DNA from: Calcarisporiella thermophila CBS 279.70
Taxonomy: Eukaryota; Fungi; Calcarisporiellomycota
DNA: 64,000 bases
Direction: 5' to 3'
Assembly: GCF_041956535.1 (NCBI RefSeq)
Contig: NW_027192192.1
Location: forward strand, 1-64,000
The notes under the pieces are model-generated. The model worked only from the letters and a program-made list of their open reading frames with translations, had not been told where the DNA came from and did not search any database. How positions within the stretch are numbered: the first letter of the stretch is position 1; each line of letters opens with the position of its first letter. The translations under genes were made by a program, and so were the position numbers. Shown in pieces: positions 3,900 to 49,241 of the stretch.

Positions 3900-4445
3900 T
3901 TATTTTCAGGAATATATGATACCCTGATTATCCTGACTGCTTGCAGGCTGATCCCACTTAAGTATACTACGGCCATTAGGGTGGGAAATATGAAGAAAGA
4001 GGATGTTCACATAGGCAAAAAATGCATTCAATTGATCGAGAGAGTGCTTGGTTCCATAATTCTTACGAGATTGTCGCACAGTTTGAGGTTATACCGCTTG
4101 CAATAGAGCTTGCTCGTGCCTATATTGAAAACACCGTCTGCTCTTTCCAGAGCTATTTTGATCAACTAAATAGGAAAAAAAAAGCTTTCATACAGACATG
4201 AAGAATTAATACGTGAAAATGTGCACATAGTAGCAACGGTTCGGAACACAACTTTCAATCATGTGCGAGAAATTCTGGGAAGAATGACGATACTAGAAGC
4301 TTGCGCTTTTCGTCACCCGGACGATATTTCAACGCGTCAGGTTTGAGTGTCAATATGATGCTTTTTATCTTTGCTCAAAATCACAAGCTTCATTAGCCAA
4401 ACCACTGGAATCCGAATATGTTCAAGAGGCAATAGCAGTGCTAAA
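3900..4445 (+). pseudogene. NB-ARC NLR relic
   Basis: Nucleotide similarity to 46020-46500 (IVAQFE.IPLAIELARAYIENT; tcacaagcttcattagccaaaccactgga); many frameshifts. Confidence 0.8.
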
Positions 4446-4825
4446 AATTCTACGTGGTCTGTGTGTCTATGAGGATGTCGGAACATATATGAATTAAATT
4501 AGTTACTTTACTATTACATATTTATGTTCACGTGAAAATTTTCTATCATTTCGTCCAGGTGCGCAAGCAGTAATATAAAGGCACCCACCGCATCATTGTT
4601 TGATTTCCCTTTCATACGCAATGTCATGAGGAAATTTTCAGACGAAATGAAGAGTCCTGCGAATTCACTAGCAAAAGGGACAGATACAAGAAATACTGTG
4701 TTTATTAAGTCATTCAGCAATCCAAAATGGGTCCTAAGAACCGTAGTCTCAATATATAATTATGTCAATTCCAATTCAATAGATTTTGTAATAAAATTTC
4801 TGGTGTGACCTAGAGTTATATGGTG

Positions 4826-7018: not shown

Positions 7019-7224
7019 GCCCTAGTCCTAGTGGAGGCTGCAAAATCGCATCATCAAATGGATTAGATGAGATGGGAAAGCCCCAACTGATATTAAAATT
7101 TGTCATGTCAATTCTAAAGTGTATTATTTTGCGTTCTGCCAAAAGTCGATAGGTGAATAATGGTTGCTGATCCTTCTGCAGCCTTGCAATACATCCAGAC
7201 CTGATATAGGAGGAAAGGCACGAG

Positions 7225-8070
7225 GATATGGTCATCAAATGGACTCAAGATCGGCTGGAAACTCAAAGTGGACACTTCTATTGGACAATTTAGTCGATAG
7301 GATTATCAAGCAGAGATTTCAAAAATTGCCTCGGGAGGATGGGTATACCCTATATCACCCTGACTACTCGTGAGCCGATCTCACTTAGTACGCTACATCG
7401 ATGTGAGAAATGTGAAGAAGGAGGAAGCTCTCAATTACTTTGTCATGATACACATCCAATTGATCGAGAGAAGACAGTTTCGTAACACTTATGAAACGAT
7501 TACGCACATTGAGTTGATGCTGTTTGTAATCAAGCTGGCGTGCTTACGTTGAAAATGCCGCCTCATCTTTCCCCAGTTATTCTGATCAGCTGAAAAAGAA
7601 GAAAGAGATCCCGCTTGCATATAGGTATAAGAAATCAATAGATGATTAAGAGCACATAATAGTAGCGGTTTGGAATATATCTTTCGATCGCGTGCAAGAA
7701 ATTCCACTTTTTTCTACTCGAATAAAACTCCACTTTTTGAGCATCAGTTTTTTGCGCTCGATCTATGCTCAAAGACACGTCCTTAAACAAAGCGCTGGAA
7801 GATATGAAGACGCTCAAGAGGCAATAGCGGTGTTAATTAATTTCTCCATTTTATCAACTACAGTTAACGAAACAGGCATCCACTAAAAGGTATTAAATTT
7901 ATTAAGGATGTATCTTCTCGCGTGTGAAAAAACTTATACTACAATTGAAGGGGAGCAAAAATAAATTGGGCGAGAAAGCTCTCCAAAATTCTCAATCGCG
8001 AGACACGAGGTATTAAGGTATATGATAACTGCGAGAGATTGTTTATGTGGGTACACCTACACATACCCTC
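7225..8070 (+). pseudogene. NB-ARC NLR relic
   Basis: KWTLLLDNLVDRIIKQRFQKLPREDGY matches KCLLLLDNLDDRIAKQMFRMLPREGGY of the 46 kb NLR; EDAQEAIAVLINFS matches the 36 kb NLR; frameshifted. Confidence 0.8.
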
Positions 8071-35721: not shown

Positions 35722-37583
35722 TGCTTGGCTTGAAACGCGCTCAAAATGGCTACTTCTCTTGGACAACTTGGACAACAGAATCGCCAAACAGCTATTTCAA
35801 ATATTGCCTCACAAAGGTGGACATATCATTTTGACTACACGTGTTCCGATCCCATCTAGGTGTGCAACGATCATTAGTGTGGTAAATATGAAGGAAGAAG
35901 AGGCGCCCTTGGCACTGCTTGGTGAAGAGATGTATTCAATTGATAGGGGGGTACTCGGTTCCATAACGCGTACCAAATAGTTGCGCAGTTTGAGTTTATG
36001 CCACTTGCAATAGAAATTGCGCGCGCCTACATCGAAAACACCGCTTCTCTTTCCAGAGCTATCTTGATCAGTTGAAAAGGAATCGAGAAAAATTGCTTTC
36101 GTATAAGGATGAAGAGTCGCTAGGAAATTATCAGCACACAATAGCAACAGTTTGGAACATTTCTTTTGATCGTGTGCGAGAATTCCCGGCAACTGTGCCG
36201 ATACTTGAAATTTGCACTTTTCTTCATCCAGATGAAATTCCAACACGTCTCTTTGAGCGTCAATTTGTTGCACTCGATCTTCACTCAAAGTCACAAACAT
36301 TTTTAGACAAACTACTAGCATTTGAAGATGTCCGAACAGCAATAGCGGTATTGAACAAATCCTCGCTTGTCACAATTACAACTAATGAGGGCGACAGCAA
36401 TAATAAGGAGATAGTATGAAATACATTAAAGATGCATCGACTCGTGCGTGAAGTGATCTATGCTAGAATTGAGGATGATAGAAAGATAAATTGGGCACGG
36501 AAACTAACTAAAGTGCTCAATCTCGAGACAGAAGATCTAAATGGTTATAATACCAAAGACAGGCCAATTATGCAAATGTACCTTTCGCACATACGATATT
36601 TCGTGGAATTGCTCGAGAATCTCAGCGAAAGAGCTATGCATTGCAAAGACCTGGTTAAATTGTTGAATAGCACAGTATTATACCTGCGCGCAAATGGAAT
36701 ATACGATAGCATACGAAAGCTAGCTGAGCTTTCGGTAATCATCAGTGGAAATATTTATGGCCCTGAGCACCCCGACACAGCCTTATCGGTTCACAGTCTG
36801 GCCAGCCTCTACTGGAGTCAGGGCAAGTACGAACAGGCGGAGCCGCTGTACCAGCGAGTTCTCGCAATCCAGGAGAAGACGTTGGGACCTGAGCACCCCA
36901 ACATGGCCTTGCCGGTTAACAGTCTGGCCAGCCTCTACTCAGAACAGGGCAAGTATGAACAAGCGGAGCTTCTCTACCAGCGAGCTCTCGTCATCCAGGA
37001 GAAGACGTTGGGACCTGAGCACCCCAGCACGGCCTTGTCGGTTCACGGTCTGGCCATCCTCTACTCAGAACAGGGCAAGTACGAACTAGCAGAGTCGCTC
37101 TGCCAGCGAGCCCTCGCCATCCGGGAGAAGACGTTGGGATCTGAGCACCCCAACACGGCATCATCGGTTAATGGTCTGGCTAGCCTCTACTCAAAACAGG
37201 GCAAGTACGGACAGGCGGAGCCGCTGTACCAGCGAGCTCTCGCCATCCGGGAAAAGACGTTGGGACCTGAGCACCCCGACACGGCCTCATCGGTTCACAA
37301 TCTGGCCAGCCTCTACTCAGAACAGGGCCAGTACGAACAAGCGGAGCCGCTGTACCAGCGAGCCCTCGCCATCCGGGAGAAGACGCTGGGACCTGAGCAC
37401 CCCGACACGGCCTTGTCGGTTAACGGTCTGGCCAACCTCTACACAAATCAAGACAAATGTAAAGAGGCTAAATCATTGTTTCAACGATCTTTGGAGATCC
37501 GGAAGAAAGCCCTTGGACCTGAGCATTCAGATACAATTGAATCTAGAAGCGCTCATACCCATTCGTTTTGTAATATATCCTAA
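35722..37583 (+). pseudogene. NB-ARC-TPR NLR: 5' part and P-loop missing, NB-ARC disrupted, TPR ORF 36432-37583 open
   Basis: LLLLDNLD, ILTTR, MPLAI and MHRLV motifs; frameshifts and an in-frame TGA at 36417; six LGPEHP-type 42-aa TPRs. Confidence 0.88.
36757..37520 (+). repeat. 126-bp TPR-coding tandem repeat (~6 units, high internal identity)
   Basis: Recurrent ggacctgagcacccc...cagggcaagtacgaacaggcggagccgctgtaccagcgag at 126-nt spacing. Confidence 0.92.
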
Positions 37584-45719: not shown

Positions 45720-46014
45720 CCAGATCATGTTGTTATCTCTCCACTTTATACACCCTTCACCTTTTGTATCATGCAATTTACTCCATGGAATTTATTTTTC
45801 TTTTTGTTTTCTTTGGTTGGGTATGGTGCCTTTCTTTTTTATCAAGGAGGTTTGGTCTTTTTTATAATTCTTTTCTTTTATTGAATTTCCTAATATATAT
45901 ACTTTATCAATGTTACTTTCTAGTAATAAACTCTTTTCAATTATGTACTCTTTTTTTTTGGCTCGTAGCAAAAAGATAAAAACTGTTTAAGTATATAAAT
46001 GCATACAGTTTACT

Positions 46015-47182
46015 AGTCTCCAGTGGTTTGGCTAATGAAGCTTGTGATTTTGAACAAAGCTCGAGCGCAACGAATTGACGCTCAAAGAGACGCGCTGGAA
46101 TATCGTCCGGGTGAAGAAAAGTGCAAACTTCGAGTATCGGCAATGCTTCCGGAATTTCTCGCACACGATCGAAAGATATATTCCAAACGGTTGCTATTGT
46201 GTGATCATAGTCACCTAGTGATTCCTCACTCCTATACGAAAGCAGTTTCTCTTGATTTCTTTTAGCTGATCAAGATAGTTCTGGAAAGAGGAAGCTGTGT
46301 TTTCGATATACGCGCGCGCAAGCTCTATCGCAAGAGGCATAAACTCGAATTGCGCCACTATCTGGTAAGCGTGATGGAACCGAGCACTCTCTCGATCAAT
46401 TGTATGCATTTCTTGGCCAAGTAGTGCCAAGAGAGCTTCTTCTTCCTTCATAATTCCCACACTAATAACCGTAGCATACCTAAATGGGATCGGTCCGCGA
46501 GTAGTAAGGATGATATACCCACCTTCACGAGGTAACATTCTAAACATCTGTTTGGCAATTCTGTCGTCCAAGTTGTCCAAGAGAAGAAGGCACTTCGAGT
46601 GTGTTTCAAGCCAATCTCGAACCCATTTGATAATTGTATCCTCCGATTTTTCTTCTAATACCATTTCTGGTATACCAAGGTGTATTGCAAGACCGCGGAA
46701 AGAGTCGGCTGCCATGGTCCAACTGTCGACTTTGAGCCAGAATACGAAATCAAACTCTTTACGATGAGCATAGCAAAAATGCAACATAAGTTGGGTCTTT
46801 CCCATCCCACCTAACCCACTGAGCGCTGCGATTTTGCAGCCTCCACTAGAACCTGTGAAAAGGGCATCTTCGATCTTTTTGGAAATATCAGGACGCTCAA
46901 CGAAGGCCTTATTTTCATGTGGAACGCCATAAACGGCGGTTTTGGCTTCTTTGTCCTGGTTCGTCATTTTTGCAAAGTTCCATGCCTCTGATTAATGCAA
47001 AAAAAAAAAAAATTAGTTTATTGACCTCTCCTTTTTAAATTACTATATACCTAAAAAAAGTTATAGTTATTGTTTCCAACGTTAATATATGCTCCGGTTT
47101 CGCCGTGTACATTTCCCCTGATATTGGATGTTTGAGAGGAGATTTGGCCAAGTTTGGTCGGAATAATGGATTATAATAGCAT
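46015..47182 (-). pseudogene. NB-ARC NLR, truncated before the repeats, with a RHIM-like first exon (47182-47051)
   Basis: P-loop GLGGMGKT, LLLLDNLD and MPLAI; frameshift near 46255; intron 47050-46988 with branch site. Confidence 0.85.
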
Positions 47183-47639: not shown

Positions 47640-49241
47640 TCAAAAATACACTCGCATGGCTTGATTGGGAGTCGATTCAGAGGGACAGTAGGGGCACTTG
47701 AATCGCACGCTGTTCCCTCGGCTTAACCGCCCAAGACTTTCGCGACAGATAACATGACCGCACGTCAACATCATCGGCGGGTTTTCCTCTGTCCCTTGCT
47801 CTTTGCTGACAGGGCAGGCGAAGATGGAATGGAATCGAAGATCCTCCGCGAGGGGGATCTCCACCGGAAGCTCGTCGGCCTGACTCCACTCGTTCTTTGT
47901 CTCGCGCATGATAGTGAACATCTTGATGATGGTAGGCAGGGCGGTGGTTCCCACGGTGACGGTGATGTAGAGAGGGGATTCGGCGGGGAGCCCCAGCAGG
48001 CGACAGAAATCGGTGGTGAAGGCGTGCTGAATATCCGACCAGTAGGAGGGCGAGAGAAGGTCGGCATAGGGCGAGCGGTCCAGACGGGAAAGGAAAAGCA
48101 ACGAACACATGAGCCGTTGTATCTCTATTGAGCCCGGCAGAAAAAAAAAAGTCAGTTTAGAAGACCGTTATGAAAGCTATTGTTACAAAACTCGGCCAGC
48201 AGATAGGCAAATAGGACGCATACCGTGCATATGTGTCTCTGCAAACTGGCCGAAGCTGATCTTGGAGTAGGCCAGAGCCTCTTCACATCCTACCGTAGTC
48301 ACCAGCTGGATAAAGCGCAGTTTGTGCAGGTCAAACTCTAATGTGCTTCCGAGAGCTTGGAGCTGCTCGTGTTTTGATTTAGCCCAGCTATGAAACGGAG
48401 AGAAAATCTGGGTTCAACTAAAGTCTTGGAGGTTGTAACAGAAGGAGAGGGCATACGTACTTTAGAGCGGGTTCGAGGTTCTTGGCTTTGAGGGCGGCGA
48501 GGATATGATACATTTCCATGAACTGCTCTTGAAGTTCATTTGGTATATCTAGATGAGCCTCCTAAATACAACATTATATGCCACAGCATTAATAACGCAG
48601 AAAATATTTATAAAAAAAATGCTCATTTCTCAAAAAAGGAAATGGCGTCGGAATCACATACTTGAATGAAAGAATTGGCAAGTTCAAACTGGCCCTGCCG
48701 TATCAGGTGCATGGCCACAGTGCGATTCAAAATGTCTTCCTTGCCCCTAAATGCTTCGGGATTGTTACCCACTGCCAGCTCTTGCTTAAATTTCTACAAG
48801 ATCCGGTTCGCCAGCATAAAGATTAGTTTATAAATAGAGTTATGGTGGAGAAGCGAGAGAAAAAACGAAGAGCATCTATGCACCTTATCTATTGCCTTTC
48901 CATATTTGCTCAGTGCACTATGGAATTCTTTTTGATCATCTGTGATCTGTGCGGAGGTTTCCTTGATCGTCTTGGAGAGGTTAGCGAGCGACACAGCAGT
49001 CGATCCTGAGAGAATGAAATAGTGGTTGCGACGTTAGTATTCAATATCTGACTCGCAGACGGAGGAAATGTAATGAAGGCGATTGTTTCGTTTCCTAAAA
49101 ATCATTACCTTCACCAGATAAAATTCTCTCCTTGGTACTTTCCAGAGCGGCAATCAACCCATCTAAACGGTCTTGATACAGTTTAGATACGGATGTCTGT
49201 TTCTTTTGTACACGCTCAAATTCTTTTGTAAGAGCTTCCAT
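47640..49241 (-). CDS. RMD5: GID/CTLH complex RING subunit Rmd5/Gid2
   Basis: LisH/CTLH region (AMHLIRQG, LEFDLHKL) and FHSIFACPVSKEQ..NPPMMLTCGHV..KCPYCP. Confidence 0.93.

What the first reader, a model, noticed from the sequence alone, without database searches (positions are those of the whole stretch)
46988..47182. RHIM-like motif exon in front of a second, unrelated NB-ARC subfamily
Seen on the minus strand: ML L*SIIPTKLGQISSQTSNIRGNVHGETGAYINVGNNNYNFF, then a 63-nt GT-AG intron with branch site leading to the NB-ARC exon. GAYINVGNNNYN aligns by eye with the RHIM core (RIPK3 GVQVGDNNYL) and the related fungal PP motif. This copy is broken: TAA at codon 4 and a 7-T run one base off frame. 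Inference: two NLR subfamilies in the window independently use one-exon amyloid modules with phase-1 introns, suggesting exon-shuffled signalling cassettes and possibly RHIM-type signalling in an early-diverging fungus.
Basis: partly seen in the sequence, partly recalled or inferred. Interest (0 to 1): 0.85.

Follow-up and report, generated by a model that had tools for sequence, protein, structure and literature searches.

The report
Broken amyloid-motif exon of an NLR
This is the decayed first exon of a dead immune-receptor (NLR) gene in the early-diverging fungus Calcarisporiella thermophila.

Summary
The sequence, the 63-nt GT-AG intron and the broken state are real, with corrections. One T is missing from the 7-T run. 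The NB-ARC has a further frameshift and stops at residue 337 of 1148, with no TPR sensor. The locus is a relic.

In intact paralogs, including deposited gene models P0156, P0035 and P0039, this exon encodes a ~30-aa N-terminal motif found on about 15 NB-ARC NLRs. The same motif sits on three unlinked effectors: a patatin lipase, on an equivalent first exon with a phase-1 intron, and the C-terminal tails of two Peptidase_C14 caspases. That is the signature of NLR amyloid signalling.

The motif is not RHIM. The G-φ-Q-φ-G core occurs in 0 of 18 copies, and there is no Pfam or PDB match. It ends in a HET-s-like φ-x-φ-G-N, so it is best called a new HRAM-like family. Amyloid formation is inferred, not shown.

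The papers I could search describe no amyloid signalling in Mucoromycota and no fungal caspase or patatin partner. First-stage notes of this scan had already flagged related motif exons and the caspase tails elsewhere in this genome.

The parts
47171..47182 (-). This is 5' leader sequence, not part of the ancestral ORF.
   Evidence: In the alignment with the intact C10 and C32 paralogs, this stretch lies upstream of their start codon and is poorly conserved.
47141..47143 (-). Lost start codon: ATC where both intact paralogs have ATG.
   Evidence: DNA alignment A3. The paralog ORFs start here, and so does deposited model P0156.
47054..47143 (-). Relic of the motif-coding part of exon 1 (30 codons): S-Q-T-S preface, then G-N-V-H-x-E-x-G-A-x-I-N-V-G-N and a short hydrophobic/aromatic end.
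   Evidence: It scores 42.7 bits against an HMM built from 9 other paralogs.
47051..47059 (-). 7-T run (47059-47053) lacking one base relative to both paralogs. TAG (47053-47051) is in frame as a result, and the exon end reads TTAG|GT instead of TTGG|GT.
   Evidence: DNA alignment A3, columns 109-118.
46988..47050 (-). 63-nt phase-1 intron: GT 47050-49, CTAAT 47016-12, poly-T tract, AG 46989-88.
   Evidence: The donor and acceptor are conserved in the paralogs, whose introns are ~64 nt. The same junctions are used in deposited proteins.
46215..46987 (-). Exon 2, the open part: linker plus NB-ARC P-loop region, aligning with residues 1-236 of the intact paralog at 79% identity.
45961..46263 (-). 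Frame-shifted continuation (paralog residues 236-337, NB-ARC end / DUF7779-like). Homology then stops and the TPR sensor is absent.
   Evidence: tblastn of the 1148-aa C10 paralog against the window; weak Pfam DUF7779 hit.

Best explanation
Window 46988-47182 holds the decayed first exon and intron of a pseudogenised NB-ARC-TPR NLR of Calcarisporiella thermophila. In intact paralogs this 76-103-nt exon encodes the whole N-terminal 'effector' end of the receptor. It is a ~30-residue, N/S/G/V/I-rich motif with no domain fold: S-Q-x-S, then G-x-[IV]-H-A-x-x-G-[GA]-x-[IV]-x-x-G-N, then a short beta-strand-like end. The same motif occurs once each on three non-NLR proteins encoded elsewhere. One is the N-terminus of a patatin-like phospholipase, which is the best match to the 47k/C10/C32 subfamily. 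The other two are the C-terminal tails of clan-CD caspases with an intact His/Cys dyad. Proposed mechanism (inferred): ligand-driven NLR oligomerisation brings the N-terminal motifs together, and they adopt a beta-arch/amyloid-like fold. That fold templates the matching motif on the effector, and polymerisation activates the lipase or caspase by induced proximity, leading to regulated cell death. About 15 sensors converge on 3 executioners. By sequence the motif is an HRAM-like family (G-N-terminated), not RHIM. The window copy itself is non-functional.
For: Shown:
- Exon 1 and the phase-1 intron are conserved in paralogs and used in deposited gene models.
- The window copy lacks ATG, is frameshifted twice and is truncated.
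- A genome-wide profile search finds only 18-20 loci: NLR first exons plus the patatin exon 1 (E=1.6e-4 with an NLR-only profile) and two caspase C-termini (E=0.08 and 0.10).
- The effector motifs align without gaps over ~30 residues with the NLR motifs.
- NLR-versus-effector local scores exceed composition-matched shuffles: z=9.1 for relic versus patatin, 6.2 for relic versus caspase 383, 9.0 for C18 versus caspase 383.
- A non-circular HMM from the 47k clade gives patatin 28.8 bits, E~4e-5.
- Pfam assigns Peptidase_C14 to both caspases and Patatin to the lipase.
- His89 and Cys140 are invariant in 22 homologues.
- AF2 gives a confident caspase domain, a disordered linker and a low-confidence tail with four short strands on the motif, and the domain has a clan-CD fold.
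- Single effector copies, unlinked genes and a ~5:1 NLR:effector ratio match what is described for HRAM3-like/PNP_UDP and basidiomycete HRAM-like motifs with a terminal G[DN] (PMC9815663).
Against: - No experiment or structure shows amyloid formation.
- The complex prediction gave no verdict.
- Taken singly, the caspase-tail matches are only marginal at genome scale (E 0.08-2).
- The effector genes are not adjacent to NLR genes; the nearest pair, caspase _383 and NLR _386, are ~9 kb apart and their motifs do not match well.
- The motif sits at the N-terminus of the patatin protein, whereas known effector-side ASMs are C-terminal.
- No Pfam ASM model (HET-s, Ses_B, NACHT_sigma, RHIM) hits any copy.
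- The motif was not found on NB-ARC relatives outside this species, although short first exons are easily missed by gene callers.
- No RNA or DNA read data could be obtained.
Confidence: 0.6

Rival explanations
1. RHIM/PP/BASS3-type motif, the first reader's reading: the exon encodes a RHIM homologue that would signal to a HELLP/MLKL-like executioner and could cross-seed with RIPK1/3.
For: There is a superficial resemblance of I-N-V-G-N-N-N-Y to the V-Q-V-G-x-N-N-Y region of RHIM. Kajava et al. (PMC4262963) argue that RHIM and the HET-s motif share a beta-arcade with a critical Gly, so distant kinship of all such motifs is conceivable.
Against: The family-defining G-phi-Q-phi-G (bioRxiv 10.1101/2020.01.06.895854) is present in 0 of 18 copies, and [IV]-Q-[IV]-G also in 0 of 18. 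The 'Q' position is N, S, L, I or A and is not conserved. There is no Pfam RHIM hit at E<=10 and no PDB chain at E<=10. The only HeLo protein has no motif tail, and no Helo_like_N hit was found (though the control genomes were silent too).
Confidence: 0.05
2. A non-amyloid homotypic interaction tag: the shared ~30-aa peptide mediates ordinary beta-strand docking or recruitment between NLRs and the patatin and caspase proteins, without prion-like templating.
For: All the in-silico evidence (shared motif on sensors and effectors) shows only a shared interaction module. Nothing computed here distinguishes an amyloid from another oligomeric beta assembly. The N-terminal placement on patatin is atypical for ASMs.
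Against: The composition (N 13%, S 12%, G 11%, V+I 16%, few charges or Pro), the length, the G-N ending, the position at the extreme termini after disordered linkers, and the sensor:effector architecture are those of validated ASMs.
Confidence: 0.22
3. The window locus is still a working gene that starts at the downstream ATG (46967) and makes a motif-less NB-ARC protein.
For: An open frame of 250 codons starts at ATG 46967.
Against: That ATG is internal in the paralogs: the deposited C32 model reads through it from exon 1. The frame breaks at ~46260. Only residues 1-337 of 1148 remain, with no sensor repeats. Neighbouring NB-ARC relics show this is a region of NLR decay.
Confidence: 0.05
4. 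The motif exon spread between gene families by exon shuffling, rather than being ancestral to all motif-bearing NLRs.
For: The NB-ARC tree puts the 47k-type and 57k-type NLRs in two deep clades (98/94), interleaved with motif-less paralogs, foreign and bacterial NB-ARCs. The motif label needs at least 2 changes. A patatin gene carries the same exon design: 109-nt motif exon, phase 1, 66-nt intron. Nearly all NLR motif exons are followed by phase-1 introns of 58-80 nt.
Against: Foreign gene models may simply lack the short first exon. N-terminal loss is common in NLR evolution. Similarity between the two clades' motifs is weak (19.5 bits), so convergence or deep divergence cannot be separated. 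There is no DNA-level similarity between the patatin and NLR exons.
Confidence: 0.4

Closest known systems
HRAM (HET-s-related amyloid motifs): NWD2/HET-S of Podospora, and HRAM-like variants (HRAM3-like NLR12 with PNP_UDP; basidiomycete NLR05/08/22/29/44)
   Same: A short motif replaces the N-terminal domain of an NLR and matches a motif on a separate effector. It has alternating hydrophobic positions, a conserved turn Gly, and ends in phi-x-phi-G-N (a G[DN] bigram). As with the HRAM3-like and basidiomycete variants, there is a single copy on the effector, the genes are unlinked, and there are many more NLR-side than effector-side copies (PMC9815663).
   Different: No hit to Pfam PF11558. The motif is ~30 aa with a conserved S-Q-x-S preface rather than a 21-aa repeat, and there is no double repeat on the effector. 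The effectors are a C14 caspase and a patatin rather than HeLo/HELL/PNP_UDP. The patatin copy is N-terminal. The lineage is Mucoromycota.
RHIM / fungal PP / bacterial BASS3
   Same: It is an amyloid-type signalling motif linking sensors to death effectors, with a conserved Gly followed by Asn-rich residues.
   Different: It lacks the defining G-phi-Q-phi-G core in every copy. There is no profile match and no HELL/Bell/kinase partner.
Bacterial BASS motifs on CHAT/TIR effectors paired with NB-ARC/NACHT NLRs
   Same: A caspase-clan protease carries a C-terminal amyloid-type tail, with NB-ARC-TPR receptors carrying the N-terminal motif. The closest non-fungal homologues of this caspase are bacterial and also have N/G/T/V-rich tails.
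   Different: In bacteria the genes are adjacent and the protease is the CHAT family. Here it is Peptidase_C14 in a eukaryote, the genes are dispersed and the motif is carried on its own exon. The bacterial homologue examined showed no matching neighbour.
Mammalian inflammasome (NLR - ASC - caspase-1)
   Same: The logic is the same: NLR oligomerisation nucleates a templated polymer that recruits and activates a separate caspase by proximity, and many sensors feed few executioners.
   Different: The polymer there is a death-fold (PYD/CARD) filament, not a short beta-arch motif. There is no homology of the adaptor element, and no gasdermin was detected here (uninformative).

Membership tests
RHIM / PP / BASS3 | Central G-phi-Q-phi-G (I/V-Q-I/V-G) core | tested here: not met
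   0 of 18 motif copies (15 NLR, 3 effector) contain it. The Q position is occupied by N/S/L/I/A. Definition taken from bioRxiv 10.1101/2020.01.06.895854.
RHIM / PP / BASS3 | Match to Pfam RHIM (PF12721) or to solved RHIM chains | tested here: not met
   No Pfam family at E<=10 for the window peptide or any of 15 paralog peptides. No PDB chain at E<=10 with the peptide or with either profile.
RHIM / PP / BASS3 | Partner with a HELL/Bell/MLKL-like or RIP-kinase domain carrying the motif | tested here: not met
   Genome profile scans find the motif only on NLRs, one patatin and two caspases. The single HeLo gene has no such tail.
HRAM (HET-s-related) | Match to Pfam HET-s_218-289 (PF11558) or a generalised HRAM profile | tested here: not met
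   No Pfam hit. The curated HRAM profiles of Daskalov 2015 and Wojciechowski 2022 were not available. My attempt to fetch PF11558-bearing proteins returned none.
HRAM (HET-s-related) | [quoted passage not shown] | tested here: not met
   Effector tails hold a single ~30-34-aa copy. From S-Q to the end there are only 33-44 residues, too short for two repeats plus a loop. Single copies are, however, known for the HRAM3-like NLR12.
HRAM (HET-s-related) | Hydrophobic-x-hydrophobic-G-N/D ending with a conserved turn Gly | tested here: met
   phi-x-phi-G-N occurs in 11 of 18 copies, and the Gly is nearly invariant (at least 90%) in A2.
NLR-associated amyloid signalling motif (generic ASM, operational definition of Daskalov/Dyrka/Saupe) | A short motif at the NLR N-terminus in place of an effector domain | tested here: met
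   About 15 NB-ARC loci carry it, and deposited proteins start with it.
NLR-associated amyloid signalling motif (generic ASM, operational definition of Daskalov/Dyrka/Saupe) | The same motif at the terminus of a separate effector-domain protein in the same genome | tested here: met
   Patatin exon 1 scores 28.8 bits, E~4e-5, in the non-circular test. The caspase tails score E 0.08-0.10 with the all-NLR profile and z=5-9 against shuffles. The patatin copy is N-terminal, which is atypical.
NLR-associated amyloid signalling motif (generic ASM, operational definition of Daskalov/Dyrka/Saupe) | Effector and NLR encoded by adjacent genes | tested here: not met
   The neighbours of the three effectors are unrelated genes. 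This is not obligatory: unlinked pairs are described for HRAM3-like and basidiomycete motifs.
NLR-associated amyloid signalling motif (generic ASM, operational definition of Daskalov/Dyrka/Saupe) | Forms amyloid or prion and cross-seeds between the sensor and effector copies | not testable with these tools
   This needs ThT/EM/ssNMR and in-vivo prion assays. The complex prediction gave no verdict.
NB-ARC NLR | NB-ARC NTPase domain followed by sensor repeats | tested here: met
   The intact C10 paralog has NB-ARC + DUF7779 + TPR_12/TPR_10. The window copy keeps only part of the NB-ARC.

The most novel reading that the evidence does not exclude
An early-diverging fungus runs an inflammasome-like pathway in which NLR oligomerisation templates a short amyloid motif that polymerises and activates a separate caspase, and in a second channel a patatin lipase. 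This would be the first amyloid-controlled caspase in a eukaryote and the first amyloid signalling in Mucoromycota. The motif is carried on a portable phase-1 exon, and the system has bacterial affinities for both the caspase and the NB-ARC-TPR parts.
Probability: 0.4. Interest if true: 0.8.

Novelty: new variant of a known kind. Interest (0 to 1): 0.58.

Why it matters
NLR-linked amyloid signalling is documented in Ascomycota, inferred in Agaricomycetes, and shown in multicellular bacteria and, as RHIM, in animals. A Mucoromycota case with caspase and patatin executioners would push the mechanism deeper into the fungal tree. It would add two effector classes and give a eukaryotic counterpart to the bacterial BASS-CHAT systems. 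It would also give an experimentally simple system for asking whether a caspase can be activated by amyloid templating: about 30-aa peptides, three effectors, and a culturable thermophile. The one-exon packaging of the motif also provides a concrete test of exon-level modularity in immune receptors. The window locus itself matters only as evidence of birth-and-death turnover in this family.

Tried and rejected
- Pfam scans of the window peptide and 15 paralog peptides at E<=10 gave nothing.
- PDB sequence searches with profiles A1 and A2 and with the peptide at E<=10 gave nothing.
- Complex prediction on patatin motif exon versus C32 NLR motif exon gave no verdict (score 0.02, controls not run). 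It is neither evidence for nor against binding.
- The look-up of sequencing runs listed no run, so read laying was not used and I made no read-level check of the T-run, the ATC or the splicing.
- The protein-atlas look-alike search of the caspase tail gave no usable hit.
- The adjacency test in relatives was uninformative. The Jimgerdemannia contig has no called neighbours. The Endogone neighbour is not recognisably an NLR. The Blastocatellia caspase is flanked by Pkinase-Ank and TIR-WD40 genes, but its tail matches no neighbour terminus (z<=0.3).
- The motif HMM does not match the Endogonales caspase tails, apart from a weak hit on P0010, so those tails are different motif families.
- My attempt to obtain genuine HRAM sequences through this genome's HeLo protein returned no PF11558-bearing protein.
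- Family searches for Helo_like_N (PF17111) and Gasdermin (PF04598) found nothing, but the control genomes were silent too, so this is uninformative.
- My initial idea that exon 1 is simply ancestral to one monophyletic family was weakened by the tree.
- Spliced products were never joined for any search. Exons were searched by reference one at a time, and the joined forms cited are the deposited proteins returned by the tools.

Full report
**1. The observation.**
There is an ATG at 47182, TAA at 47173-71, and a 39-codon frame (47170-47054) ending in TAG directly before GT (47050). A CTAAT branch-like site lies at 47016-12, followed by a poly-T tract and AG at 46989-88, giving a 63-nt intron. 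Exon 2 starts at 46987 and enters the NB-ARC ORF 46215-46967 in phase 1 (Pfam NB-ARC E=1.5e-10).

The exon is not a chance ORF. Its DNA matches two other loci of the same 28.2-Mb genome at 73-74% identity (E=6.5e-25 and 2.6e-24). Both loci sit immediately upstream of NB-ARC genes that are 78-79% identical to the window's.

**2. What is broken.**
I aligned the window DNA with the two intact paralogs, C10 and C32.
- Their start codon aligns with window ATC 47143-41.
- The window lacks one base in the T-run 47059-53, and its exon end reads TTAG|GT instead of TTGG|GT. This puts TAG in frame.
- The donor and acceptor are conserved.
- Downstream, the window aligns with only residues 1-337 of the 1148-aa C10 paralog (NB-ARC + DUF7779 + TPR_12/TPR_10). 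There is another frameshift near 46260 and no TPR sensor.

The locus is a relic. Further NB-ARC fragments lie at 3927-4515, 7027-8065 and 35726-37580.

**3. The exon in intact genes.**
I translated upstream of every NB-ARC paralog and searched for ATG...GT...AG models that splice in frame. About 15 loci have a first exon of 76-103 nt followed by a 58-80-nt intron, nearly always in phase 1. Deposited gene models returned by the databases begin with exactly these exons and junctions:
- P0156 for C32, the relic's closest relative
- P0035 for C6
- P0039 for C8
- P0168 for C1:536k
- P0044 for C1:911k

. These protein names also identify the organism as Calcarisporiella thermophila, Mucoromycota.

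**4. The motif.**
The 15 peptides align to a pattern (A1): M-x-S-Q-x-S, then G-x-[IV]-H-A-x-x-G-[GA]-x-[IV]-x-x-G-N, then a short alternating hydrophobic end. Composition is N 13%, S 12%, G 11% and V+I 16%, with few charges or prolines.

A profile of the NLR peptides searched over the whole genome in six frames returned 20 hits. All but three were NLR first exons. The three others were:
- The first exon of a patatin-like phospholipase on C16 (E=1.6e-4).
- The extreme C-termini of two paralogous Peptidase_C14 proteins on C1 (E=0.08 and 0.10; Pfam E=4e-16 and 6e-12).

Adding the effector copies to the profile found no further loci. The effector copies align without gaps to the NLR copies over ~30 residues, including the S-Q-x-S preface.

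Support for the NLR-effector match comes from two tests.
- Local alignment scores between NLR and effector motifs exceed composition-matched shuffles by z=5-9: relic versus patatin 9.1, relic versus caspase _383 6.2, C18 versus caspase _383 9.0.
- A non-circular HMM made only from the 47k-type clade gives patatin 28.8 bits (E~4e-5 at genome scale). It gives the caspase tails 16.2 and 13.7 bits, weak but placed exactly on the tails.

So the patatin link is statistically solid. The caspase link is supported jointly by position, paralog conservation and shuffles, but it is marginal as a single E-value.

**5. The effectors.**
The patatin gene has the same design as the NLRs. Its motif exon is 109 nt (L049:1492-1600), followed by a GT...AG phase-1 intron of 66 nt. 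The next exon encodes the D-G-G-G-x-R-G oxyanion motif, and a later one the G-T-S-T-G serine motif.

The caspases are single-exon. His89 and Cys140 are invariant in 22 homologues. The AlphaFold2 model has a confident domain (residues 1-270), a disordered acidic linker, and a low-confidence tail with four short strands on the motif. The fold matches MALT1, metacaspases and legumain.

Homologues occur in Endogonales and then in bacteria. Most end in N/G/T/V-rich tails of other sequence families. A third caspase copy, on C39, has an internal stop and a degenerate tail. None of the effectors is adjacent to an NLR.

**6. Which family?**
RHIM, PP and BASS3 are defined by a central G-phi-Q-phi-G. It is absent from all 18 copies, and the Q position is not even conserved. 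No Pfam ASM model hits, and no PDB chain is retrieved at E<=10; that database includes the RIPK1/3 and HET-s fibrils. No HELLP-like partner exists: the one HeLo protein lacks a tail.

The motif does share with HET-s-type motifs the phi-x-phi-G-N ending (11 of 18 copies) and a nearly invariant turn Gly. Its genomic behaviour also has a precedent. It occurs as a single copy on effectors, in unlinked genes, with about 5 NLR copies per effector copy. This matches the HRAM3-like/PNP_UDP and basidiomycete HRAM-like motifs with a terminal G[DN] described in PMC9815663.

I therefore call it a new HRAM-like ASM family. I could not run the decisive profile-profile comparison because no genuine HRAM sequences could be fetched.

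**7. One origin or shuffling?**
An IQ-TREE phylogeny of the NB-ARC regions changed my initial view. The 47k/C10/C32 group and the 57k/61k/65k group lie in two deep clades (98/94). The second clade also holds motif-less paralogs and bacterial NB-ARCs, while the first holds foreign eukaryotic relatives. The motif label needs at least two gains or losses.

The two clades' motifs are only weakly alike (19.5 bits, E~0.03). It is not demonstrated, because foreign gene models may have missed the short exon.

**8. Mechanism (inferred).**
By analogy with NWD2/HET-S and the BASS systems, NLR oligomerisation would nucleate a beta-arch fold of the N-terminal motifs. That fold would template the effector copy and activate the lipase or caspase by induced proximity. 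About 15 sensors would feed 3 executioners, possibly in two or more specificity channels: the 47k type to patatin, and the C18/C6/C11/61k types to the caspases. No step of this has been shown experimentally. The complex prediction gave no verdict, and no sequencing runs were listed.

**9. Literature.**
The searchable corpus describes fungal ASMs only in Ascomycota and Agaricomycetes, with HeLo/HELL, SesA/B and PNP_UDP effectors. Caspase-clan (CHAT) partners are mentioned only for bacteria. Fungal CHAT domains are described as fused to receptors, in contrast to mammals, where the caspase is separate. Nothing links Calcarisporiella, or Mucoromycota in general, to amyloid signalling. Absence from this library is not proof of novelty.

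**10. Verdict.**
The RHIM reading is rejected, while the amyloid-module reading is supported at the family level. First-stage notes of this scan had already flagged HET-s/HRAM-like first exons on other NLRs of this genome and amyloid-like tails on the caspases.
- the corrected anatomy of the relic
- the genome-wide inventory of motif copies
- the patatin partner and its shared exon design
- the explicit RHIM and HRAM membership tests
- the tree

Noticed in passing
window 35726-37580 (+), 3927-4515 (+), 7027-8065 (+): There are more NB-ARC-TPR relics of the same subfamily in the window. One partial copy covers paralog residues 119-499 plus TPRs at 78-94% identity, and two are heavily decayed fragments. 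The start of contig C2 is an NLR birth-and-death region.
   Followed up: partly
L049:1492-2461 (G000:C16:~694917-695886): A patatin-like phospholipase has a first exon that is an NLR-type motif exon (phase 1, 66-nt intron). The ASM-like motif sits at the N-terminus of an effector, which is unusual because known effector-side motifs are C-terminal.
   Followed up: yes
L066:478-1644 (-) (G000:C38:7175-7831 region): The genome has a single strong HeLo-domain gene (Pfam HeLo, 180 bits) with a globular-looking C-terminal half and no amyloid tail. Its best database matches are Basidiomycota (Serendipita, 62% identity), and no identical deposited protein was returned. This may reflect horizontal acquisition or an unannotated gene.
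   Followed up: partly
L060 / L062-L063 (G000:C39:19131-20138): A third caspase paralog has an internal TGA and a degenerate tail. It lies next to a Tc1/mariner-like transposase ORF and long withheld (N) stretches.
   Followed up: no
L069:5296-13156 (Blastocatellia bacterium contig): The nearest bacterial homologue of the caspase sits between a Pkinase-ankyrin gene and a TIR-WD40 gene, in what looks like a defence island. Its N/G-rich tail matches none of the neighbours' termini.
   Followed up: partly
P0003-P0013, P0018, P0023 (Jimgerdemannia, Endogone and metagenomic caspases): Endogonales caspase homologues all carry an acidic linker followed by diverse N/G/T/V-rich C-terminal tails that the Calcarisporiella motif HMM does not match. 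The caspase tails may have diversified into several motif families.
   Followed up: partly
G000:C1:900999-902051 (-) and C1:911381 (+): Caspase VTP21DRAFT_383 and NLR VTP21DRAFT_386 lie ~9 kb apart in divergent orientation with two genes between them. That NLR has the most degenerate motif of the family, so they do not look like a matched pair.
   Followed up: partly
window 47640-48110 (-): The gene immediately upstream of the relic encodes an RMD5/GID-type RING protein. It is an ordinary housekeeping neighbour, not an effector.
   Followed up: no
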